Part shown: in pieces, positions 3,148 through 22,800 of the stretch | Layout: the number at the start of each line of letters is the position of its first letter | How positions within the stretch are numbered: position 1 is the stretch's first letter | NCBI GenBank assembly: GCA_950097015.1 | Contig: CATNEN010000028.1 | Location: forward strand, 496,001-560,000 | Origin: Macrostomum hystrix | Lineage: Eukaryota; Animalia; Platyhelminthes | DNA: 64,000 bases | Reading direction: 5' to 3' | Notes under the pieces: model-generated | What the model was told of the DNA's origin: nothing | Databases searched by the model: none | Seen by the model: the letters and a program-made list of their open reading frames with translations, nothing else | Made by a program: the position numbers and the translations under genes

Positions 3148-6100
3148 TTAGCAACCAAGAGCGTCGTCATTAACGCCGTTCTTAGCGACCACCGGGCGCG
3201 CCAACGCTGACTCGAATAGTCGAGTGCCGCTGAAGCCGACTTCCAATTCGGCCGGCTCCGTTGAATTGGCGACAGCGGCTTCCATTGAGGCTGCCGTTGC
3301 TCGGCGAAGCGGGCCGCCAACAGCTCCGCTGCCGCCGACGACAGCCGCAGATGCGGCATCTTCGGCGCCGGGCGGCAAGTCAAACGCCGCGTCCACAACA
3401 GAGTAGGGTGTGAGGCCGAGCTGCATCAGCTGAGCTTTGGCGGGCTCGAGCTCGCGACCCTCAATCAGTAGGTGCTGATCGTAGGGCGCCACCCCGTAGG
3501 CTTCCATGAGGAGAAGCTTCAAATCTTGGACAGTGGCATCCGACGCGACGTCAAAGCGACGATCTGTTGGTTTGCGACGAATTCGTGCGGAGCGCCAAGG
3601 CTGCTGCTGCTGGTGCTGGTGCTCACCCTTTGCACACTTCGCCGGCGGCGACTTTATTTCATCATTAATGTCATCATTCTTATTAGAATCTGCGTCACCG
3701 GAGTCGGCGGCAGCGGCTGACTCCGACGTCGACGATGCTGACGCAGCAGCGGCGCGTTTCCGACTACCGCCGACGCTTGACCGGGTGCCAAAGGCGGCCC
3801 CGACTAGCCTGGCAGACGAGCTATCATCGGCAACTCGAACGTAGATGGTCATCTTGAAGACGTTGTCTGCGCCGGCAGTTGCCGGCGCGGCAGCGGCGTC
3901 GTCATTGTCAGCGTCGGTGGTGGAGGCCCCGCTGCCGTTGTTGCAGCACTCTTTGCAGACATCCGGCTGGCAGGTGTCGTCCTCTAGGCGATAGATTTCA
4001 ACGCCGTCGCTCTTGTAGGCCTCAACCAGGGCCAGCCATTCGCTGGGTGCCAACGCCACTAAGCCGGAGTCCACGGAGTCTGGCCGGCATTGAAGTCCGC
4101 CGTGCTGGCACAGGTGATGAGAGTTCGGCACAGGACCTTCCGGCGGCTCAGCTAACGGAGTAGTTGTCGACTCCTCCTCGGCGGCGGAAGCGGCAGCCGC
4201 TGATGCCACAAAGCGACGCCAGAGAGCAAGAAAGTCGACGTCTGCATAGTAGATCCTGCCGCCGCAGTCGGTAACGCTTAACTGTCGGTGAGGGCCGCCT
4301 CCGCCAGGCCGGTGCCGTTTGAGATGGGCGGACAGGTGAAACAGGGCGTCGGATTCGGCCTTGGCCCGGCTCGCCAGGCGACTCCGCTGCTCCGAGCAAG
4401 TCGGGCAGGGCTGGGCATCGTGCCAGTAGGTCGGGCAGCCAGGAAAATAGGCGGCCAAGCGCTGCCAGACCTCCTCGTTAAGGAGGCGCCGGCGGCCGGT
4501 TTCGCAGCAGAGATTGCCATGCTGGCAGAGCAGGTCTTCGTTAAAGGCGAAATTGACAGTCGAAACGGCGGTAGCGCCGTTGGAGAGAGAAGATTGTACC
4601 AAATTACTGCCAGATAATTGGCCGCCTGCTTTTTTAAATGCAAGTTAAGTAAAGTAAAAGACAATAATAAATTTAGTATTTTATAACTGCCCCTGAGAAT
4701 TGAGTGGCAGAGCGGTTCAACCCGTTCGCCTTTCGCACAAATGTCCCTGAGCTTGATTCTTTTGACGCGCAGCCGCGAAGAGAAGGCTTGGGGGCTCGTC
4801 GTACAATTTACGCCATTGAGGGCCAACCTCCAAGGCACAGTGAGAGTACACTGCCTGACGATGAGAAAGTCAAGTCAGATGTACACACCCGTGTTCGTGT
4901 GTGCTCAGGAGTCAGCAGAATGGACAGAATTGCCTCTCCAGTTGTTCTACCTGTCCCCAATCGGGTCAGATGTGCAGTCGACAGCACAGCCGAAGCTATT
5001 GCGCGGCGCATTTGAAGGCTACATATGGCTTTTCATTCCATGAACTCCGGTCCATGGATGACAAGTGTCTTGCTAAATGGCGAAAATTGTTCCAATGGAG
5101 TCAAGAATCGAACCTCCGACCGTGAAATCGTTAGTCCGACGTTTTAAACACATGGCAACAACCCTTTCTACATGCTTCCACATTAAAAAAGGCTTAGCAA
5201 GATAAGATTACTTATTTCCATAAACAGTTTGTTAACGAGTCTACGAGTTGTAAAATGTCTTTGTTACAGACACATATTTAGGGGGTCGATGGCAGAGCGG
5301 TTATCGCGTTTGCCTCTCGCACCAAGGTCCCCATGTTCGATTCCGCGGCGAGGCCACATTTATTTGGGGCGCAGCCGCGGAGAGAAAGCTTGGGGAGCTT
5401 GTCGTGCAATCTACACCCCTAAGGGCCAACCTCCAAGGCACAGTGAGAGTGTACACTGCCTGACGATGAGAAAGTCAGGGCAGATGTACACACCTGTGTG
5501 AGTGTGTGCCTGAGTACAGTATCTGTATATCTGAGCGCGTGTGCTCAGTAGTCAGCGGAATGGACAGAATTGCTCGTCGCTTGCTGCAGGTTTAGAGTCA
5601 CCAAATAATGTGCCATTGCCCGCAGCCCTCCAGAAAACATATTTGCCACTCACTTGACGAAACTCCGTCTGTTGGCAACGTTGAGCCGTCATCAATATTA
5701 GTGTTGTCATCTTCGCCTGCGGCTGAGATAGAATCGGATCGAGTTGGAATCGAGGTTGGACCAGAAGTGGACTCGGAATACTCCTGCTGCTGCTGCTGCT
5801 GCTGCTGGTGTTGCTGGTGTTGCTGCTGCAGCTGCTGGCGGGCGATGTTCTTCCAAGAGCGCAAAGATTTTGTGCCAACCCAGGCCGAACGAGTGCTGGA
5901 ATCTTGGCCAGCCTGCTTTTAGAGAGATGAGTAGAGAGGGTAGACAATAGCTGTGTTACCTGTTAGACAATGGTAGTGTCTAGTTAGACAATGGTAGTGT
6001 CTAGTTAGACAATGGTAGCGTCTAGTTAGACAATGGTAGCGTCTAGTTAGACTATGGTAGTGTCTAACTGTTAGACGATGGTAGTGTCTACCTGTTAGAC

Positions 6101-11000: not shown

Positions 11001-13132
11001 TTAAGCGTCATCTTCGTCGCTATCCGGCACAATGGGCGGCGCGGCAGCCGCCGAAGCGACGCCTTTGCGCTGCAGGTAGCGCTGCCTGGCGTCCGACACG
11101 GCGTCGGCATTGTTGCGTCGTCGGAGCTTCACAAGCAGGAGAGGATCTAGCACTGCGTCGCCGGCTTTAGACGACGATGTCGCCGCAGCCGCGTTGTCGG
11201 ACGATGTCGAACTAGACCTTGACCTTGACCTCGACCTACCACGACGTCGTCTCTGAGAATGCCGATCTTGATGACGATTTTTATATCGATCTCGACTGTC
11301 TTCGTTGATGGACTTCGATGAAGCTGACGATGGCTTGGCCAGCGGCTGAGGCTGAGCTGCTGCAGGAGCCGGCTCCTCCGGCTGACGCTTGCGACCGTGG
11401 TCGAGCAGATTGCGATAGAAGCCAGTCAGATCGTGCTGCTTCGCTGCGTCTTGCCTGAAAGATTAATATTGTTTTAAAATAATAGGTTGTGTTTGGTAAT
11501 GCTTGATTCTCATCCTTACTCCAAATGGCTTTGAATTTATCTTTCTGCTAATACGAGCTAAAACAAAAAACATGCAACTAAAACAAAAGCTCCAACACAT
11601 CTGCCAAATCATAATCTTTCCATTTTATAAAACCTGCCTAAACCATTAAGTCCCATTAAAAAATCAACTTGCAAAATGTTGAAAAATTGAATCTCTATTC
11701 TAAGAAATAATTCAAGCTTTCTTTTCTTTAGAAGATGGCAAATCTCCATACAACTTTCCTTCCGTAGAAATGTGAGATTTTAAAAATGTCTATCCACCAA
11801 GTTGCCCCACCCCAAATCTTTCTATCAACCCAGTTGCCCTACCCCAAATCTTTCTATCCACCCAGTTGCCCTACCCCAAATCTTTCTATCCACCCAGTTG
11901 CCCCACCCCAAATCTTTCTATCCACCAAGTTGCCCCACCCCAAATCTTTCTATCCACCAAGTTGCCCCACCCCAAATATTTCTATCAACACAGTTGCCCT
12001 ACCCCAAATCTTTCTATCCACCCAGTTGCCCTACCCCAAATCTTTCTATCCACCAAGTTGCCCTACCCCTAATCTTTCTGTCCACCCAGTTGCCCCACCC
12101 CAAATATTTCTGTCCACCCAGTTGCCCCACCCCAAATATTTCTGTCCACCCAGTTGCCCTACCCCAAATCTTTCTATCCACCCAGTTGCCCTACCCCAAA
12201 TCTTTCTGTCCACCCAGTTGCCCTACCCCTAATCTTTCTGTCCACCCAGTTGCCCCACCCCAAATATTTCTGTCCACCCAGTTGCCCTACCCCAAATCTT
12301 TCTATCCACCCAGTTGCCCTACCCCAAATCTTTCTGTCCACCCAGTTGCCCTACCCCTAATCTTTCTGTCCACCCAGTTGCCCCACCCCAAATATTTCTG
12401 TCCACCCAGTTGCCCCACCCCAAATCTTTTCATCCACCCAGTTGCCCCACCCCAAATATTTCTGTCCACCCAGTTGCCCCACCCCAAATCTATCTGTCCA
12501 CTTAGATTGTTTGTTTCTTTAAAACATCCCAACCGAGAAAGATTCAATTACCTAGCATCCTTGGCCTCCTGCAGTTTGTGCTGCCGTTCAAGCTCGGTGA
12601 ATTCCGCTAGCTTCTTCTTATAAGCCGAAGTGACAAAGGCCTCTTTATCGGCGTAGAGCTCGCCTTCGGCTTCGCGTTCCGCTTGAACCTTTCGCTCCCT
12701 CTGGTATTCACGCTCCATTTGGCGTTCGCCGGCCGACCGCATCAGGCCGCCGATGTACTTCGGTGCCCGATCGCTCACAGTCTTGACGGCGCCAGTGTCG
12801 CGCGGTCGCCGCTCTGTTATCTGATCATAGATTGAGTCGTATTCGAATATACTCGGATCTTCGGCCAGGCATTTGTCGATGTCGACCCGGGTGGAGCTCT
12901 TCAATCGGCTGTGGCCGGCCGCCTCCAGGGCAGCCCGGCGGGGGTCGAATTTCTTGGCGAATTTCGCATCGAATTTGGCCTCAGCCTCCCCATCGGAATC
13001 GCTCTCGTCGAATATCGACGGTCGGGCTAGTTGCTGCGTTTGCTTCTGCTGCTGCTGTTGCAATTTTTTTGCCCTTTCTTCGCCGGGAATAATCAAGCCG
13101 TAGGATTTGTTTTTGTCGCCAGTTCGTGACAT
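11001..13132 (-). CDS. NSRP1: Nuclear speckle splicing regulatory protein 1 (NSRP1/CCDC55, DUF2040), 2 exons, ~344 aa
   Basis: Exons 13132-12552 and 11454-11001, phase 2, GT-AG. Motifs KSYGLI, EDPSIFEYDSIYD, PKYIGGLMRSA, DKEAFVTSAYKKKL, KQHDLTGFYRNLL, C-terminal AVSDARQRYLQRK. Confidence 0.92.
11788..12500. repeat. 32-bp minisatellite (TCTATCCACCCAGTTGCCCTACCCCAAATCTT), ~22 copies, NSRP1 intron
   Basis: Direct periodicity; explains the PSCPTPN-type ORFs. Confidence 0.95.
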
Positions 13133-13545
13133 TGCTTAAGACTGCAAATGTTTGACATTTGCCTTTTTTAACTGGTATAAAATATATAAATGTTTTAAGT
13201 CAACGAAGGCATGCACTCACACAGATACTTATATGTACATCTACCCTGACTCTGAGCCATGGTACGCTCTCATTGTGCCTATATCAACTGCACGACAAGC
13301 ACCCAAGCCTTGTCTCCACTGAGACCCTGGGGGTATAACTGGCTAGTCGTATATACTAAAAATGCTATTGCTTATTTAATTGCTTGCTTGCGACTAGGAT
13401 ATAAAGTCACGAGATGAACGAAAACACACTTTTAACCAGGTAAAAATTCGCAAATGAATGCAAAAAATGCTGATAAAATATATTTAAATGTCGAATTTTT
13501 TACAAACTTGCACAAACATAACAATAGAAATAAATGCTTGATTCT

Positions 13546-15676
13546 TCAATCATCAGCCAGTAGATCTCGCACAGACTCCAATCGCATTCCGTACAACGAT
13601 CGAAACGCCATTCCAGGCACCGGACCGTCGGGATCGTCGCCGGCTTCGCTGTCCAGGAAGCGTTCCGGCAGTTCGCGAGCAGCCACTGGCCAAGCGCCGC
13701 CTGTGTCTGCCAGCCTAATTTAAATGCACGAAATAAGACAAAACTGACCACATTACTATTAGTAGGGTAATGAGAAATGCACCATTTCTACAGAAATAGT
13801 TCTTAAACACCCCACCTTAATAGTAGACGCATCAGCGGACCAATTGGCAAGTCTGGCAGGCCAGTGACCAAGCCGCGAGCGCCGCTGCGACAGCGTTCAA
13901 CCAATGGCAGTCTAGCGTGCCGCAGGCCCAGTTGTTCAGCCCTGGCAGCCGACAAACGATTGGTTACATCGCCAGACGAACTGACACCTATGATCAAGGC
14001 TAGAGGCGGCGTTGGCGATTTTCTAGCCGAGCTAGATGAAGAAGGCGAGAGTGAGACAGGTCGGAACAGGCGTTCAGCTGAGGGGGCCTCGACGCGCGAG
14101 AAAGCGGACAGGTATAACAGACGATCGCGGCCGTACCTTAAAATGATTAAGAACAGCAGTGGACAGTGACAGCGAGTAGTCGGGGTCTCGATATACCGCA
14201 AAATACTTTGTCTTCCTATCTTACTGCCAGACCGCCATAAAAATTTTAAGTACAAAGTAACAAAGCACTAACTCCTGGAAGACTCTCTCCTGGCTCGTTG
14301 TACATAATATTCTCGTGTAGACCTTGTGATTAATTGGCTAATTTCCGAAAATAGGCCACCTGTATACATCGGGAAATATCAAATCTAGAGTGGCAGTCTA
14401 TCTAGACTGCATTGAGCAAACGGTTAATGTACACAGGCACACGCAAGCAAACAGGGTGAATATCTACTCGCATCTACCACTTATCTGTCTACCTACAATA
14501 CAATATCTAGTATTGGTCTACTAAATTGGTTTAAATTTTACGAAAAGCCCCCCCAAGCCTTCTCTCCGCGTCTGTGCCCCATATTAATGTCGCTACAACG
14601 CAGATTCGAACTCGCGAACTTCTATGAAAAAAAGTCGAATTCTCACCTACCAATAGCCGATTGCAAGCTATCCACAGTGTCCAATGGCAGTTCTAGGAAG
14701 CTCAAACCGTTAGTTTCGCAACGGAAATAATAATGAAATGCACAGTTTGGTCGAAGACCGCAAACTACCAGATGAAACGGTCTATCAGATGCGTAATTAG
14801 CCTGCAGGCAGAGCAGCACCTGGCGAGCCAGATTGCGCCACTCCAGGTGCCCATTGGCGTAGCCGGAGAAATCTAATATCAGCGGCTGTTTGTCAGCGCT
14901 AGACAAGCCGGACTCCACAGCCAAGCTGGCCAGGCTGCGAGCCAGTTGAGCCGATTGGCCCGGCTGTCTGGCCAGCCAATCGTCCTGCGACTGATGCAGC
15001 TGCATTCTGTGCATATTGTAGTAGGCAATAAGGCGATCGGCCTGTAATCAATAGGATAGGGCATTGCGGTTGCAAGGTGGAAATGGAATTCTACAATTCA
15101 TTAAATAACCAAAGCTCTGGTGGTAGATCTATTCTGTATGGTGAAAATATAAACTACAAAATACGACTTCGAGCCGCGGAGAGAACTCTTAGGGACTTGC
15201 CGTGCATTTCACGCCCTTCACGACGAGAAAGTCAGGGCAGATGAACACCCCGTGTGAGTTTCTGCTCAATTGGTTCCATTTTTCAAACTAACCGGATCTC
15301 GATGCCGCGCCAGATGCAACAGCTCCTCGATCTTCAATGGACCAGGCGGCAGGCAGACAGCAAATGGTGTTGAACTGAGCAGTAATACCTCAGCCTGGAG
15401 GCCGGCAACATCGTTGGGTGATAGGAGTCGATCGAGTAGGGCCTCAGCAGGCACTGAGTCGTCTAGTAGGTTGGTAAGGCCGTCACATGTTGGGAGAGGG
15501 TGCATGCAATCCAGCAGATCCTCTAGGCGGCATTCAACCAGACTGCCAAGTGCCCAGTTGCGCAAGCGATCAACACTGCGCAATGCCGAGTGCTGAGGCC
15601 GCGACTGCGACTGTTTAGCTACAGCAGCAACAGCGCTGCTCAAACTGCTGCAGCAGCGCTGAATGCACCGAAATGA
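13546..15676 (-). CDS. TRMT10-family SPOUT tRNA m1G9/m1A9 methyltransferase (possibly mitochondrial TRMT10C/MRPP1-like), at least 4 exons; no ATG at the start of the first visible exon
   Basis: Exons 15676-15293, 15041-14647, 14136-13816, 13714-13546, GT-AG and phase-compatible. TRM10-type motifs PLILDFS, NLARQVLLCLQANYASDRPFHLVVCGL, LLYLS, ALIIG, AARAEQLGLRHARLPL, LMRLLLRLADTGGAW. Confidence 0.8.
14545..14625 (-). mobile_element. SINE family 1 fragment (TRMT10 intron)
   Basis: Reverse complement reads AGTTCGAATCTGCG...GGGGCACAGACGCGGAGAGAAGGCTTGGGGGGC. Confidence 0.65.
15165..15262 (+). mobile_element. SINE family 1 internal fragment (TRMT10 intron)
   Basis: GCCGCGGAGAGAA...GACGAGAAAGTCAGGGCAGATGAACAC. 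Confidence 0.65.
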
Positions 15677-16831
15677 CTGCAGAGAAGTTAAGTTTATTAT
15701 ACAGTTTATCTGCTGGTTCTCTTAATCCCTGACACCCCTACTATTTCAAGCAATTTTATTTTCTAAAGTTTTCTTTTTTGTGTGAACTGTACAAATTCAT
15801 ACTGCAAAATAAACAGAAAACTATTAAAACCTGTCATACATTCCTATTACATTAGTTTTAAGGTTAACACAAACATGTAACCTTAATTAATAATTAATAA
15901 GGTATCAGTACAAAAATGTTAAATGCTAAATTTTAAAAAATATTTAACAGCTCAATTAGAAGTCTAACATATTTATAAAAAGCACTTGTATTTAATTACT
16001 ACAAGAATGAACAGTTTTCTATATTCTATCAGTTAGTTAGAACAGAACTCTTAAATTATAAAAACATGAGGGCATGTGAGGGAAAAAGAAAAGTATATGA
16101 AAACATAAAGGCATCAGAAAAATAGTCCATATAAAACATACACCCTGCCGACCCGGCTGAACCGGCCGGGTGAAACGAGGGCCAACAAGGTAAGTCGCAA
16201 AAACCAATTGACCAAGCACAAAGAAATCAAAGGGGGGACCAAGGGACAAAAAAGGAAGGCGTGAAGAAAAGAAAAAGGGGAGAGAAAAGGAGAGCAAATG
16301 AGAGCAAACTAAGTCGTAAATAGAGCAATGAAATAAACTAAGTCGAAAATGAGAGCAAACTAAGTTGCATGGCCGGCTAAGATTTGGGAGGTTGCGCATG
16401 TATGATATAAAAGATAAGGAAATAAAGTCCATGGCCATACATAATATATATTAGTAAATATATTTGTAGCAAGAAGCTAAATAATTTTTTTGAAAACTGT
16501 TTACACTTAACTTTTGAGACAATCAAGAGATAAAAAAAATTCCCATATAAGAAAACTGGCAATACAAAAAATTCACATTGTCTTATATACCCAACTAGCT
16601 TTTTTTGCCCGTTGTTTTTGGGGCAGAAATTTAAAGCAAAGCAGTAAGCAATTCACGTCTCTGTATTAACTTTATAGTGAAGGTCACCATTTATTTATTT
16701 ACTGCATTAATGAAAAGTGAAGAGTTTGTTTAAGGGCGTTTTAAGTAAAAAATAAGTGAAAAGTTTGTCCAAACAGCCCCCTCTTGATTACTTCTTTAGA
16801 AACATGTCTCTTAGCCACTCCTCTATACAGT

Positions 16832-17104
16832 CAGTGGCAGATCCAGGAATTTTGTTTTGGGGCGGTCTGTCAGGGGAGCGCCATGAGAATCACAGAGGGG
16901 GTGCCAGCGGCCGAAAAAGGGCGCCAGGAGCCAAGAAAGGGCGCCAGCGGCTGAAAAACGGGAGCCAGCGGCTGAAAAAGGGGCGCCAGCGGCCGAAAAG
17001 GGGCGCCAGTGCTGCGACTGGCGCCCCTGGTGGGGGCATCTTATTCCCATGATTAAAATTTAGGGGGGCAACTGCCCCCCCTTCCCCCCCTAAATCTGCC
17101 TCTG
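16832..17104. mobile_element. hAT-type MITE (273 bp) nested in the Helitron 3' region
   Basis: TIRs CAGTGGCAGATCCAGG / CCTAAATCTGCCTCTG; perfect 8-bp TSD TATACAGT at 16824-16831 and 17105-17112. Confidence 0.9.
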
Positions 17105-17256
17105 TATACAGTATGCATGTGCACGCGTATACATAAGGAAAATAGCCATGGCATAACAATAACAATGTCAAAGAAACAAAATTAAACTGTTTCAGAGTTC
17201 AGAGTTAGACAGGTCAAGGTCAATTCGTGACTACTTTTCTATTAATTGCTTGCGAG

Positions 17257-19830
17257 TCACCTCAAGGCCTGGGGATACACCACATTCTTCGTTCTTCCCC
17301 TTGGTGCGAAAATGAATAGGCCAGCTGGATTTCCAACACGGGAGCAGGCGACATAAAGCTGCCCATGCGAGAAGCAAGGAGTCTCCAGGTTGATGCCAGC
17401 CACCTTCAGCGACTGTCCCTGAGCCTTGTTAATAGTCATCGCAAAGCACACTCTCACAGGGAACTGCAGTCGCTTGAACTGAAATGGCAGGTCCGTGGGG
17501 ATAATTGGAATCCGGGGAACGAACACAGACTCTCCTCTGCCAGATCCAGTCATTATCGTGGCCTCAATCACGTATGGGAAGAGCCGCCTGACTATCAGTC
17601 TGGTGCCGTTACACAGCCTTGGCGCATTCAGGTTGCGGAGGAGCATAATTGGTGCCCCAACTTTCAGCTGCAAGTTGTGCGATGGAGTTCCAGGAGGATC
17701 TAGAGAGTTCAGAAACTCAACAGGATACTCCACAGCGGTGTCATCAGTCAACGTTGTATCAATTGACTTGTAGGTGAAAACTGCACCTGGCAACTCCTGA
17801 AGCAGTTGGTAGTTAATTTCGTTGGCGGCATCATTTCTAGGACACAGAATTGCCCTCTCTGACAGCCAGTCAACGTCAGCATATCGAACCATCAGGTTCG
17901 GGTAAACTTTTGCCTTGAGCTCCTGCACTGACTGCACAATGGTTCCGATTGTAGCGATCGATGACTGCCCATCCTCGGTGCTAATCTCCAGCAGACCATT
18001 GCCGATTCGCAATAGATTGGCAGAGAACTCATGAGCTGTTTCGTCTCCTTGAATTGTAGCTCTCATGTTTGTTCGTACAGGTGCAACTTCACAACCGATG
18101 GCCACAGGTGAGATTATTTTAGGCAAGCATTAATCTCATCAGCAGGAGTGCCACGCGGAATCACAGGCAGCGTCTGTCTAAAGTCTCCAGACAGCAACAG
18201 AGTGACACCACCCATCAGTTGATTGCTGTTGCGCAGGTCTTTCAAAGTTAAGTTGAGTGCTTCAAATGCCAGTTTGTGGGACATGGTACACTCATCCCAG
18301 ACGATGAGCTTGCAAGCCTGAAGCACTCTGGCAGTGCCTGTGTTTTTCTTGATGTTGCACAGCGGATTCTCCGCTCGAGACAGATCAAGCGGCAACTTCA
18401 GTGCTGAGTGGGCAGTGCGACCGCCTGGCAGCAAGGTGGCTGCAATTCCAGAGGAAGCTACAGCAATGGCAACGTCGCCTCGTTGCCTGACCTTTGCCAG
18501 AAGGAGGTTGATTAGAAATGTTTTTCCTGTGCCACCTGGAGCATCAAGAAAAACCATGCCACCAACGTTGTTGTTGACTCTGCGCAATAGCTCGCGGTAC
18601 GCCTCTAGCTGCTCAGGCATGAGTCGGGGCTCATTCTCCTCTATGAACTGTACCAGCTGCTCCTGGTCATAGCCTCTTTCTCGCAGCATCTCCCTGCACA
18701 GGTTGTCCTGTTGTCCTGTCCTGTTTGCTTTTGGGAGTCCAAAACAATCTAGATAGCGATCGGTCAACTCCAGCACCTTGTCCTCAATGCGCAGCAGGGC
18801 CTCGTTAAACACTGCTTCTGTGAATGGCAACTCTGGCTCCTGAGCCACGAATCGCGCCCGGAAGAGAATGTCTTCGGCCATGGGTTCTTTGAATGTTTCC
18901 CAAAGCTGAAGTGGATCAGAGAGACCACAGGTGGCAACCATGATGGCAAAGAGATCTCGCAGGTGACTTGGTGAGCGCACCGTTGCCGCTTCCTCCAATG
19001 TCGCTCTCCATTGAGCATCATCTTCCAGCAGTCCCAGTCGCTTACATGCTTCATAAAAAGTTGGGCAGGTATGGCCTTCCACCGTTCTAATGTGTCTAAA
19101 TGACGTCGGACCAATCACGGTGTGTAGCAATATACGCAGGTAGTAGCATTCACGGTGGTTTGGGTGCACCGTGTACACTCTGGCTAATGCATCAGTCTGT
19201 CGTATTTCAGGATGGCCCGGAACTGCAGCGCCTTGAACCCGCCGCTTCCATCCTTTTGAAGAGGCGTTCCATGTGTAATAGGCAGGCACCTGGTGGTACA
19301 GCAAAGTCCTGGCAAAGGGGTCTTCAGCGCACAACTTGAAGAAAGCAGTAAGAGTAGTGTCCTGTGGCCTTTGAGCACGCTGCTGGATGTTCTCCTCCGT
19401 AAAGTATACTCTCTGACCGTTTTCCAGGTGCACACTGAGGTGCATGACAGTTGGGTGGCGTTCATGAATAGAGAATCCGAAGATTCGCCACATTGCCTCG
19501 TTGGAGCTGATATACCTTCCGCTCTTGAAGCGATTGACTTCGTCAAATTCGTTTACTATGCCTCCAGGTCCCTCAATGTTGAACACTGCTTGGTCGCTAC
19601 CCTTGTTCACGTACTTGCAAATGTACTTGATTGATTTAACAGAGTTGCAGTACTCAACGTTGATGTGTGCATTGAACACCTTGGACAGTAGCGGGCAGTA
19701 GGGAACGACCCATCTGTTGTCCAGATCGATCTCTTCATTCCCATGGCTGCGTAGAATAATGCGAGTGGTAAAGCCGCCATCCTCACGTGATCTCCGTCGA
19801 TACAGCGGATAACCGTCTTGTATTTTAGCA
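17257..19830 (-). pseudogene. Helitron RepHel remnant: end of Rep domain plus PIF1-like helicase, interrupted near 18115
   Basis: DGYPLYRRR, NRWVVPY, SVKSIKYICKYVNKG, DAPGGTGKTF, IVWDECTM, GDFRQTLPVI, LRNLNAPRLCNGTRL, MTINKAQGQSL, HGQLYVACSRV. Stop after NACLK plus a frameshift before RTNMRA; no Rep HUH motif seen. Confidence 0.9.
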
Positions 19831-22800
19831 AAGCACTGTACGCCAGCCTCTCTCTTTCTTCTATCCCAGGCTGGCTGGAGAGAAATATCGACCGGAGAGC
19901 CCTGCGCACTGGGACGCCACCGCACTCACCGCACTCAGTCTCAGTGCTGCTTGGGGGCCAGTAGACAGTAGGGGTTTGGGCTGTGTACATTCACGGCTTG
20001 AAATACAATGTACAGTCTGGGGCTTCGGCGCCCGGGGAAGGGAGGGGGTGGCTGTAATAAAATTTGGCCCGCAGAGTGGCGGAGGGGAGTTGGGGTGGCT
20101 GTCCTCGGAAAACAAAAAGTGACTCACTTTGAGATGATGCAGCTTTGCTCTGGATTGAGTAGAGATGTTCAAAATTGACAGCATTGTTGGAAAACATGTA
20201 AAGTGTAAGTGGATCAAATTTGGAGAAAATCTGACAAAGTGGGGCGACGATATGTCGAATTGAGTGATTTTTTGACGATTTTTGAGCAGTTTTTTGCACT
20301 TTTGAGCAGGAAGGAAATGATTTTTCGGGAATTTGAGTAGCCTATTGCACTCAACATAGGTGGTTTTAGGTATGTGCAAAGTTTGGTGCGATTTGGTTGA
20401 GCGGTTTTGGCGTCTATAAAGACAAAAGGTTGCACACACACACACACAGACAGAGTTTTCACTTTTATATATATCGATTTTACTTTCTTTGATTTTAACT
20501 AAACAAGATTAATTATCATAATTTTTGCTCTTACGAATAATTAAGTTATTTATATATACATAGTAAAATGCTTAATTTTTTTACTTCATTTTTGAGACCA
20601 AAAATTATCCAATAGAAGACTATGATTTCTCTCATATGACAGTACAAAATTATGCAATCAAAATTAACATAAAATATTAAAACTTTATCAGTAGCATATC
20701 TAAGTGGGTTGGGGATATATTTCCTCCCTCGGAACAATAATACATCCCTCGGTATAAAGCATTTGTTAATCTTTTTTACTGCAAATTTCTGAAGCGTGAT
20801 TGAAATATAGTAGGAAAGCCAAGGTATAGGGCCAAAACAAATTTGAAACATTTTATACACCCCCTGAAACAATGTTTCTATAAAATCAGTTTTATATCAT
20901 GATATTTTCAATGTAAATTCTCCTACATAAATTAGGATAGAATATTGTGAACTACTAGCTTTTTCTAGAGACACTAGAAAATTTGGTAGAGAAACTACCA
21001 ATTTTTGGCAAACATTGGGCAGCCAGTTCAAAAGCTAATCTTTACTATGCTTCAGTTTTATCTAATCGCTTCTTTGTAGGCATCAGTCCTTAGAGTATTT
21101 ATCTGTAAGATGCTAGAGCATGCTTCCATTTGACAATTGGACTTATTTGTACTATTATTTGAATTTGGATCACTCAACTTACTGTTGTTTATGCAGTATA
21201 CAGAATACATCCCAAATAGTTGAACTTTCGGAAGCATTTGCAGGCTTTGACATGCTTACTAATTTAAACTTAAATCAAGAACTTAAAGAATAAAAATGTT
21301 GTTCACAACATAATATATAAAGTCACAATCTGGCAATTATTGTCAAGGTCAAGGACAAGGGCAATCTCCTAGTTTGTGGTATTTAATTTTACGTTTTGTA
21401 AAAAAGGATACTTATAGATACAAAAAAAATTGGTACGTGTTGGGTCAGATTATGTTTATAATCTTTTGTCACTATTCACTGGTCAGTAGGGCCTAACAAA
21501 TAATGCTGCAACCAATCCACAAAGTAGCTAAAATATTTCTCTGTTAGGAGTCAGAACCATAAATATTTGTTTAGATGGCCTCAAATGTCAAACAGAGCAC
21601 CAGAAGTGCAGTACATGGCCTTGAATTTGTCCTTGACATGGGCCAAATACTGCTTTGGCTTTGGTGGTTTTTAGGTCTTTAACGATCCATTGAATTCTAT
21701 AAAAAGACTCTTAATCTCAACCTGTCCCATTGTTCTGATGTATTGCTCCTATGTATATCCCAAAAGCCTATTTTATCAACATTTAAGCAAACTTTGTCTA
21801 CAGGATCTAGTTCGAATTCGAGGTTGAGATTAAGTGTTTTTACTTCGGCTAGTTTTGCAGACGGCACTTCGATTACTAATGTCGATTGTATTTCCTTGAA
21901 AACACTAAATTTTAAATAGTAAATCAAACTCACTCTACCGGGTCCCGTTATTTTAAGGTTTTTACTTTAGCACGAGACGAATGAAAGCATCAATGTTCTA
22001 TTTTGACGACTAACTTTGTATTTAAAATGACGAGCTGATTTATTCTCTTAATCCAATTCTGACAACACAGCGTCGCGATTAAGACGGAATTCTAGTTTTT
22101 CATGACGGCCTGCTTCTTCCTGCTTTGTAATGAAGTATTTAGATCGTACATAGGTTTCCAAACATGGGCCCCGTAATGCAAAAAACATTGTATTTTCTTT
22201 TGATGCTGCGCGCTGATGTACTCGTACATATTATTAATTTCGGCTCTTATGATAAGTTTTACAACAAATCCCAGTGCAGAGTTCACTTAAGGCCAAAATC
22301 TCTAAATGAATTGGTCTCGCTGCATGTTTAAGCCCGATGACATTCCTGGGACTTTCTGTGACATTTTTAATAGGCACGCAATCCTATACATTTATTGAGT
22401 TACGATCCGTGGTGGCGGCCGCTTCACTTTATTATTATGTTAAATTCATGAGATGCGAATGCAAGTAACAACCTGGGCTTGTCTAGAGCCAATGGTTCAT
22501 TTTAATACGAAGGGAATTATAATCAAGCGAATATATATGCTCAGATGTGACGGCAACTGTTATAATATCCAGACACGCAGACGCACACACACACAAACAC
22601 CAGCCAGCAGTTGTAGGAGGCCCACTTATGTTGTACTCAACTTGAAAAATTTTAAAATGCTCAGCATCATGGCTAAGTGTTTCGTCTAATTCTAATTTAA
22701 ATCTTGTAACTTCTTTTAAGCTAGCTATTCTGCATGCCTTTTGAATAGAGAACATTATATTTTATTTCTCTCTCTCTCTCTCGATCGTCTCTTTGTGACA

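What the first reader, a model, noticed from the sequence alone, without database searches (positions are those of the whole stretch)
15293..15720. TRMT10-like gene has no start codon of its own: candidate for a spliced-leader-donated AUG
Seen: the first recognisable exon starts at a clean acceptor (AACTTAACTTCTCTGCAG|TCA TTT CGG TGC, 15676) and is exactly 128 codons, phase 0 at both ends. There is an in-frame TAA a short way upstream and no ATG until about 55 codons in. Adding one AUG gives M-SFRCIQRCCSSLSSAVAAVAK, an Arg/Ser/Ala-rich stretch without acidic residues, like a mitochondrial presequence. Established: flatworm spliced leaders end in AUG, and this AUG can initiate translation (shown in Schistosoma). 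Inference: trans-splicing would supply the initiator Met and so create the targeting peptide of an MRPP1/TRMT10C-type enzyme.
Basis: partly seen in the sequence, partly recalled or inferred. Interest (0 to 1): 0.7.

Follow-up and report, generated by a model that had tools for sequence, protein, structure and literature searches.

The report
Spliced leader supplies a start codon
A flatworm (Macrostomum) gene for a TRM10-type, probably mitochondrial, tRNA methyltransferase has no start codon of its own and almost certainly takes it from the AUG that ends the trans-spliced leader; this mechanism is already known in flatworms, so this is one more example.

Summary
On the minus strand a 384-nt, phase-0 exon (15676-15293) opens directly after a CTGCAG acceptor. 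An in-frame TAA lies 16 codons upstream. No ATG occurs in any frame for 143 nt, and the first in-frame ATG is codon 58.

RNA contigs confirm all three introns. In two runs the contig ends 24 non-genomic letters beyond the acceptor, and nothing covers the DNA upstream. Those letters were not printed. At the neighbouring gene the printed loose end matches the 3' end of the published Macrostomum lignano leader, which ends in ATG. Codons 21-57, upstream of the first genomic ATG, are under purifying selection against M. lignano (pN 0.25, pS 0.65), so translation must start further upstream.

The enzyme assignment is weaker. Pfam finds nothing and AlphaFold failed. UniRef names the M. lignano orthologue a TRM10-type methyltransferase, and the only solved relatives are TRMT10C/MRPP1, at E about 0.05-0.1. 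The first 35 residues have no acidic residue and a net positive charge, which fits a mitochondrial presequence but does not prove one.

This scan already found leader-donated start codons in other genes of this genome, and the mechanism was published in 2006. Verdict: real, a new member of a known kind.

One extra point: the M. lignano orthologue has a genomic in-frame ATG at the equivalent N-terminus.

The parts
15677..15682 (-). Trans-splice acceptor CTGCAG at the end of a pyrimidine-rich tract
   Evidence: Sequence read. It fits the [T/C]TNCAG motif enriched at M. lignano trans-splice acceptors (PMC8629364). RNA contigs stop matching the genome at 15677.
15722..15724 (-). In-frame TAA in the outron, 16 codons upstream of exon 1
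15293..15676 (-). Exon 1: 128 codons, phase 0 at both ends, no ATG of its own before codon 58
   Evidence: Contigs X3 record 10 and X5 record 21 cover it completely, and the joint 15292/15040 confirms the donor.
15572..15676 (-). Presequence-like head: 35 codons with no D/E, 5 R/K, 1 H and 14 S/A/T
   Evidence: P about 0.013 for no acidic residue, given 11.7% D/E in the rest of the protein. The helical hydrophobic moment is not above shuffles (274 of 2000).
15503..15505 (-). First genomic in-frame ATG (codon 58), preceded by an out-of-frame ATG at 15533-15531
14647..15041 (-). Exon 2 (395 nt), which holds the start of the TRM10-type SPOUT domain (PLILDFSGY...DRPFH)
   Evidence: Joints in three runs. 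Aligns to the M. lignano orthologue at 69% identity. This region gives the TRMT10C matches in the PDB.
13816..14136 (-). Exon 3 (321 nt), the core of the SPOUT domain
   Evidence: Joints. ESM Atlas look-alikes are all TRM10 clusters (score 0.87, 177 shared features). 73% identical to M. lignano TRM10-type proteins.
13546..13714 (-). Exon 4 with the TGA stop at 13548-13546; contigs end at 13497 (3' UTR about 50 nt)
12551..13147 (-). Neighbouring NSRP1-like gene: acceptor TTGCAG (13147-13142), exon from 13141, own ATG at 13132. It served as the positive control for the leader.
   Evidence: Pfam NSRP1_N, E 1.2e-33. The X1 loose end at 13142 reads TATTGCAT plus G on the minus strand, which is the leader's 3' end. 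X3, X4 and X5 contigs carry 22 extra 5' letters.

Best explanation
The gene is transcribed with an outron that is removed by spliced-leader trans-splicing at the CTGCAG acceptor. The leader's last three bases, AUG, come to lie directly before the codon TCA at 15676. They are in frame with a 422-codon reading frame spread over four exons. That AUG is the first and only AUG upstream of codon 48 in the mature mRNA, so it acts as the initiator, giving a 423-residue protein. The product is a very divergent TRM10-type SPOUT methyltransferase. Its layout (about 180 residues before the catalytic domain) and its only solved relatives point to the mitochondrial TRMT10C/MRPP1 type. The basic, acid-free, Ser/Ala-rich first 35 residues would then serve as the import signal.

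Shown here: the exon structure, the absence of a genomic ATG, the 5' end of the mRNA at the acceptor with a short non-genomic extension, the AUG-ending leader in this host, and protein-level constraint on the codons before the first genomic ATG.

Inferred: that the extension is the leader, that ribosomes start at its AUG, that the enzyme is a TRMT10C orthologue, and that it is imported into mitochondria.
For: - **No genomic start.** The acceptor, phase, upstream TAA and lack of ATG are as described.
- **mRNA 5' end at the acceptor.** Contigs X3 record 10 and X5 record 21 lie on 15677-15292 from their 25th letter, so 24 letters at the 5' end do not match anywhere in 12450-18400. No contig covers 15678-16031, and no joint enters 15676 from upstream. 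All three introns are confirmed in three runs.
- **Extension length fits a shared leader.** A 24-25-letter extension is what a 31-mer assembler keeps of a sequence shared by thousands of mRNAs. The control gene keeps 22-23 letters.
- **The host's leader ends in AUG.** The loose end at the neighbour's acceptor reads TATTGCAT plus G, identical to the 3' end of the 35-nt M. lignano leader (PMC8629364). The G3 2023 paper notes that the Macrostomum leader probably contains the final ATG as a translation start (PMC10468722).
- **The upstream codons are translated.** Codons 21-57 against M. lignano give pN 0.25 and pS 0.65.
- **The orthologue is also unmodelled at its start.** NCBI files the M. lignano orthologue PAA50197.1 as 5'-partial, without a Met.
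- **Enzyme family.** UniRef names the orthologues TRM10-type. The PDB top hits are all TRMT10C/MRPP1, at E 0.05-0.6, with two collinear segments. Atlas look-alikes of exon 3 are all TRM10.
- **Head composition.** The same acid-free property holds over 59 residues in M. lignano.
Against: - The 24 extra letters at 15677 were not printed (53 loose ends were left out), so the leader is not read directly at this junction.
- The runs are contigs, not raw reads, and are not on record as RNA.
- Pfam finds no domain in any exon or in the full M. lignano orthologue.
- The PDB matches are above conventional significance.
- Two AlphaFold attempts gave pLDDT 33-35, so the fold could not be tested.
- The amphipathic moment of the head is not above shuffles, and no trained targeting predictor was available.
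- There is no translation data.
Confidence: 0.8

Rival explanations
1. A short cis-spliced 5' exon, lying outside 12450-18400 or missing from the assembly, is joined to 15676 and carries the real ATG or is an untranslated leader.
For: The 24 letters were not displayed, so their identity is inferred. A Helitron-like insertion lies upstream and could have separated a first exon from the gene.
Against: - Two independent runs stop after exactly 24 letters. That is the length expected when a 31-mer graph branches inside a shared leader. A unique exon would be assembled further.
- The acceptor fits the trans-splice motif.
- The neighbouring gene, 355 nt downstream, is demonstrably leader-spliced.
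- No joint to any upstream place was reported, although joints with sides of 24-29 letters were reported elsewhere.
Confidence: 0.07
2. The leader is added, but its AUG is skipped. Translation starts at the conserved genomic Met (codon 58) or at a near-cognate codon, and the upstream part is 5' UTR.
For: The Met in ...CMHPL... is conserved between the two species. The leader AUG has a weak context, with a pyrimidine at -3, as seen in the leader sequence.
Against: - Codons 21-57 show pN well below pS (0.25 against 0.65), so they are translated.
- A scanning ribosome that skipped the leader AUG would first meet the out-of-frame ATG at 15533.
- In S. mansoni the leader AUG was shown to initiate (Cheng et al. 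2006, as cited in PMC9851317 and PMC12582326).
Confidence: 0.07
3. The start-codon mechanism is right, but the protein is not a TRMT10C orthologue and is not mitochondrial. It would be a divergent Macrostomum-specific TRM10-type paralogue, or an inactive relative, with another location.
For: No Pfam hit. Apart from the two M. lignano protein clusters, the billion-scale searches returned only one weak hit, which was not examined. PDB E-values are only 0.05-0.6. The motif around the presumed catalytic Asp carries an insertion (GVSSSGD), seen in exon 3. The amphipathicity test is not significant.
Against: - The only solved relatives found are TRMT10C; no TRMT10A, TRMT10B or yeast Trm10 chain appears.
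- The SPOUT match starts at residue 196 of the orthologue, against about 186 of the 408-residue TRMT10C chain, so the architecture is the same.
- The acid-free basic head is kept in both species although its sequence and length differ.
Confidence: 0.25

Closest known systems
Flatworm mRNAs that use the spliced leader's 3'-terminal AUG as initiator (Cheng, Cohen, Ndegwa and Davis, J Biol Chem 2006; slORFs of PMC9851317)
   Same: The leader ends in AUG. The acceptor sits at phase 0 directly before codon 2. No genomic ATG is available, and the reading frame is open from the junction.
   Different: The host is a free-living macrostomid, not a schistosome. Initiation is not shown experimentally here. 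The gene is one not listed before, as far as the papers read here show.
Human TRMT10C / MRPP1 (PDB 5NFJ, 7ONU, 8CBK and others)
   Same: It is the best and only solved relative. The N-terminal region before the SPOUT domain has a similar length, and two collinear matching segments include QPL..D and PFH. An N-terminal presequence is expected.
   Different: Identity is very low (about 15 bits). Pfam does not recognise the domain. There is an insertion near the presumed catalytic Asp. The human gene has its own ATG.
Macrostomum lignano orthologue PAA50197.1 (BOX15_Mlig034004g1) and UniRef A0A1I8JGX6
   Same: Identity is 61-78% per exon. The neighbour is the same (NSRP1-like gene downstream), and the acid-free N-terminal head is shared.
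   Different: The M. lignano genome has an in-frame ATG (L001 5974-5976) where the window species has ATT just inside exon 1. It has CTT where the window has the CAG acceptor. Its head is about 23 residues longer.
Other leader-donated start codons noted by this scan in the same genome (PIPOX paralogues, CHMP6, mitochondrial tyrosyl-tRNA synthetase)
   Same: Same genome, same leader, same anatomy of an ATG-less first exon at a phase-0 acceptor.
   Different: A different gene. Here a comparison with a congener shows that the start codon is genomic in one species and absent in the other.

Membership tests
Leader-AUG-initiated flatworm mRNAs | The host's spliced leader ends in AUG | tested here: met
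   The loose end at 13142 in run X1 reads TATTGCAT plus G, identical to the end of the published M. lignano leader.
Leader-AUG-initiated flatworm mRNAs | The leader is joined at the acceptor directly before the reading frame | tested here: inconclusive
   Two runs have contigs with 24 non-genomic letters 5' of 15677, with no coverage and no joint upstream. The letters themselves were not printed.
Leader-AUG-initiated flatworm mRNAs | The leader AUG is in frame, with no stop before the conserved protein and no earlier genomic AUG | tested here: met
Leader-AUG-initiated flatworm mRNAs | Translation actually starts at the leader AUG | not testable with these tools
   Only indirect evidence: codons 21-57 show pN 0.25 against pS 0.65.
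TRM10-type SPOUT methyltransferases | Significant match to a curated TRM10 domain model | tested here: not met
   Pfam gives no hit for any exon, for P0001 or for P0004, even at E up to 10. UniRef's name for the orthologues says 'TRM10-type domain'. That is the source's own annotation and was not re-run here.
TRM10-type SPOUT methyltransferases | Sequence similarity to solved TRM10 family members | tested here: inconclusive
   The six best PDB hits are all TRMT10C, at E 0.05-0.6, with a second collinear segment. Atlas features of exon 3 point to TRM10 clusters.
TRM10-type SPOUT methyltransferases | SPOUT trefoil-knot fold | tested here: inconclusive
   AlphaFold2 on the orthologue, whole and as the domain alone, gave pLDDT 33 and 35. 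No fold search was made.
TRMT10C / MRPP1 subfamily | Long N-terminal domain before the SPOUT domain | tested here: met
   The SPOUT match starts at profile position 196, against residue 186 of the 408-residue TRMT10C chain.
TRMT10C / MRPP1 subfamily | Cleavable mitochondrial presequence | tested here: inconclusive
   The head has no acidic residue in 35 positions and a net charge of +5. Amphipathicity is not above shuffles. No TargetP or MitoFates was available.
TRMT10C / MRPP1 subfamily | Groups with TRMT10C and not with TRMT10A/B in a tree | not tested
   No family members beyond Macrostomum could be retrieved.

The most novel reading that the evidence does not exclude
Start-codon turnover between congeners. 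In M. lignano the orthologue keeps a genomic in-frame ATG at the homologous N-terminus. In the window species that ATG has become ATT, and a CAG acceptor created 5 nt upstream lets the leader's AUG take over, in a frame restored by two small indels. If so, a gene can hand its start codon to the leader, or take it back, within one genus, and a mitochondrial import signal then depends on trans-splicing in one species but not in the other.
Probability: 0.35. Interest if true: 0.45.

Novelty: new member of a known kind. Interest (0 to 1): 0.3.

Why it matters
- **Annotation.** Gene finders that require a genomic ATG will truncate or mislabel such genes. NCBI files the M. lignano orthologue as 'partial', and UniRef holds fragments and a fusion with the neighbouring gene.
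- **Biology.** The case adds a probable mitochondrial tRNA-processing enzyme to the proteins whose N-terminus, and probably whose import, exists only after trans-splicing.
- **Evolution.** The two-species comparison offers a simple, testable example of how a start codon can move between the genome and the leader.
- **Limits.** The mechanism is not new and it answers no open question.

Tried and rejected
- **Domain and structure searches of single exons.** Pfam on single exons found nothing. PDB phmmer on exons 2 and 3 alone found nothing useful.
- **Search for transcript-derived proteins.** The stop-to-stop frame around exon 1 (15269-15721) found no protein of 84-266 residues, so the RNA contigs could not be fetched by that route.
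- **Further homologue searches.** Searches with the M. lignano orthologue and its domain returned only the two M. lignano clusters.
- **Fetching the orthologue's DNA.** The look-up of encoding contigs found nothing for P0001. The second M. lignano copy (L002) lacks exon 1 because of an assembly gap and an inverted duplicate.
- **Structure prediction.** AlphaFold2 was run twice with shallow alignments and was unusable both times, so no fold search was run.
- **Other searches of the window.** The leader sequence does not occur in the window. Rfam and tRNA scans of the upstream region found nothing real.
- **First DNA alignment.** A MAFFT alignment of the two species' 5' regions was unreliable. 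A local alignment was used instead.
- **Similarity of the extreme N-termini.** It is only suggestive: 25 of 2000 shuffles reach the score, and a wrong frame scores about as well.
Full report
**What is in the sequence**

The gene lies on the minus strand. The stretch ...AACTTAACTTCTCTGCAG is followed at 15676 by TCA TTT CGG TGC. From there the frame stays open for 128 codons, up to a GTTAGT donor after 15293. An in-frame TAA lies at 15724-15722. The first 143 nt of the exon hold no ATG in any frame. The first ATG (15533) is out of frame and opens a 16-codon ORF. The first in-frame ATG is codon 58, at 15505.

**Gene model and RNA evidence**

One search for sequencing runs found four small runs from one study that hold about half of the words of the gene region. 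That share is what exons alone would give. It also found a run of another study with a smaller share.

Laying three of the four runs plus the other-study run on 12450-18400 gave three joints, each in three runs, all with GT..AG ends on the minus strand. They fix the exons at 15676-15293, 15041-14647, 14136-13816 and 13714-13546 (TGA at 13548-13546). That is 1269 nt, or 422 codons plus the stop. Contigs end at 13497.

At the 5' end, contig X3 record 10 (777 nt) and contig X5 record 21 (1017 nt) both lie on 15677-15292 from their 25th letter. Each therefore carries 24 letters that fit nowhere in the 5.9 kb laid. The match runs one base past the exon, into the G of CAG, as expected if the preceding sequence ends in G. 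No contig covers 15678-16031 in any run, and no joint enters 15676 from upstream. 

**Is the extension the spliced leader?**

Three indirect arguments say yes.

- **The host's leader ends in AUG.** The neighbouring gene on the same strand is an NSRP1 homologue (Pfam E 1.2e-33). Its acceptor is TTGCAG, its exon starts at 13141, and its own ATG is at 13132. It served as a control. The X1 contig there ends in a loose TATTGCAT, followed by the G at 13142. That is the 3' end of the 35-nt M. lignano leader, which ends ...TTATTGCATG (PMC8629364).
- **The length fits a shared sequence.** In X3, X4 and X5 the control gene carries 22 extra letters, and the gene under study carries 24. A 31-mer assembler can follow a sequence shared by thousands of mRNAs only until the gene-specific part of the word becomes too short to be unique. 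That leaves 22-25 letters of leader. A unique cis exon would have been assembled further, and would not stop at the same letter in two runs.
- **The acceptor fits the motif.** CTGCAG fits the [T/C]TNCAG motif reported for M. lignano trans-splice acceptors.

Earlier notes of this scan report the same leader joined before codon 2 of other ATG-less genes of this genome. I treat those as leads only.

**Is the leader's AUG the start?**

It would be the first AUG of the mRNA, and it is in frame. The M. lignano orthologue (locus L001) allows a test. For codons 21-57, all upstream of the first genomic ATG, pN is 0.25 and pS is 0.65, with 22 of 37 residues identical. This is close to codons 58-128 (pN 0.17, pS 0.72). 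The stretch is therefore translated, and translation must begin upstream of it, where the genome offers no ATG.

That the flatworm leader AUG can initiate was shown in Schistosoma (Cheng et al. 2006). I know that work only through papers that cite it. One of them says the AUG is in frame in 28% of trans-spliced S. mansoni transcripts and that more than 40 cDNAs need it. [quoted passage not shown]

**What the protein is**

- **Direct searches.** Pfam and the PDB see nothing in single exons. Language-model look-alikes of exon 3 are all TRM10 clusters (score 0.87, 177 shared features).
- **Orthologues.** An exhaustive search with exon 3 found two M. lignano protein clusters at 73% identity, plus one weak hit to an 1863-residue protein that I did not examine. 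UniRef names the two M. lignano clusters 'SAM-dependent MTase TRM10-type domain-containing protein'. One cluster member is PAA50197.1, 438 residues, filed as partial and beginning SSIGNAAAV... without a Met. It aligns to the four exons at 61, 69, 74 and 78% identity.
- **Stand-in searches.** Used as a stand-in, the orthologue gets no Pfam hit. Its six best PDB hits are all TRMT10C/MRPP1, at E 0.05-0.23 as a single sequence and 0.11-0.59 as a profile. The match starts at residue 196, against 186 of the 408-residue chain, and a second collinear segment lies near the C-terminus. No TRMT10A, TRMT10B or yeast Trm10 chain appears.
- **Structure.** Two AlphaFold2 runs failed (pLDDT 33 and 35).

I conclude that this is a very divergent TRM10-type enzyme, most like TRMT10C, with moderate confidence.

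**The presequence**

The 35 residues after the donated Met contain no Asp or Glu, 5 Arg/Lys, 1 His and 14 Ser/Ala/Thr. Given 11.7% acidic residues in the rest of the protein, the chance of none in 35 positions is about 0.013. In M. lignano the corresponding head is longer and different in sequence, but it is acid-free for 59 residues. The helical hydrophobic moment is not above shuffles (274 of 2000). The head fits a mitochondrial import signal but is not shown to be one.

**Comparison with M. lignano**

The synonymous divergence (pS 0.65-0.72, dS above 1) shows that the window comes from another Macrostomum species, not from a recent duplicate.

In L001 an in-frame ATG lies at 5974-5976, 27 nt upstream of the annotated partial start, and gives MSLSLCRCYSSIGN.... 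A local DNA alignment (score reached by 0 of 1000 shuffles) pairs the window's TCTCTGCAG TCATTTCGGT with M. lignano's TCTCTGCTT TCATGTCGCT. So the M. lignano ATG corresponds to ATT at 15674-15672 in the window, and the window's CAG acceptor corresponds to CTT in M. lignano. Two single-base indels further on bring the frames together at CGC TGC TGC AGC AG / CGC TGT TAC AGC AG.

This suggests that the start codon is genomic in one species and leader-donated in the other.

One thing is unexplained. The NCBI model of M. lignano starts at 6001, next to a TTACAG (5997-6002) that fits the trans-splice motif, yet a leader joined there would put its AUG out of frame. Without M. lignano RNA reads I cannot say which 5' end is real. 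The second M. lignano copy (L002) lacks exon 1 because of an assembly gap.

**Surroundings**

The TRM10-type gene ends at 13497, and the leader-spliced NSRP1-like gene starts at 13141, so they are 355 nt apart on the same strand. That is inside the 1-kb limit used to call operons in M. lignano. A UniRef model in M. lignano even fuses the two genes (P0002). Upstream lie AT-rich DNA, repeats with very high RNA depth (16032-16430), and Pif1-helicase ORFs of a Helitron-like element (17257-19925). None of these is joined to the gene.

**Verdict**

The start-codon reading is well supported, at about 0.8 including use of the AUG. The enzyme and targeting part is plausible but not shown. The mechanism has been known since 2006, has been remarked upon for Macrostomum, and was found by this scan in several other genes of the same genome. 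This is a new member of a known kind. The cross-species swap of the start codon is the only part with some novelty, and it needs M. lignano RNA data.

Noticed in passing
L001:5940-6010 (M. lignano NIVC01003696.1): The orthologue has an in-frame genomic ATG at 5974-5976, but NCBI's model starts at 6001 as 'partial'. A TTACAG at 5997-6002 fits the trans-splice motif, yet a leader joined there would put its AUG out of frame. Which 5' end is real is open.
   Followed up: partly
window 13132-13147 (minus strand): At the NSRP1-like neighbour the leader is joined 9 nt before the gene's own ATG. The leader AUG is followed by UCU UAA, a two-codon mini-ORF that ends 3 nt before the real start. In M. lignano the arrangement differs: the acceptor is CTCCAG and is followed by 11 nt before the ATG (L001 10630-10660).
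   Followed up: partly
window 13141-13497: Only 355 nt separate the 3' end of the TRM10-type gene from the leader acceptor of the NSRP1-like gene, which is operon-like spacing. A UniRef model of M. lignano (P0002) reads through from one gene into the other.
   Followed up: partly
window 17257-19925 (minus strand): Two adjoining ORFs carry PIF1 helicase and Pif1 2B domains (a Helitron-like element). RNA contig depth here is 90-240, far above the neighbouring genes.
   Followed up: partly
window 16032-16430: This stretch, with short direct repeats (GACTTAGTTTGCTCTCATTT-like), has contig depth up to about 1200 in all three runs and many loose ends. It is probably a dispersed, expressed repeat and is not joined to the gene.
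   Followed up: no
window 14440-14638 and 15037-15434: Part of intron 2 has depth 220-380 with loose ends at 14578-14590, so it is a repeat inside the intron. Intron 1 and the adjoining part of exon 1 have about 60-80 extra depth in runs X3 and X4 but not in X5. This is unexplained.
   Followed up: no
window 16899-17009: A tandem array of a 20-nt unit (GGGCGCCAGCGGCCGAAAAA, 5.4 copies) lies between the gene and the Helitron-like element.
   Followed up: no
L001:9940-10340: A long (GACA)n-type microsatellite fills much of the intergenic space between the two M. lignano genes. It is absent from the window species.
   Followed up: no
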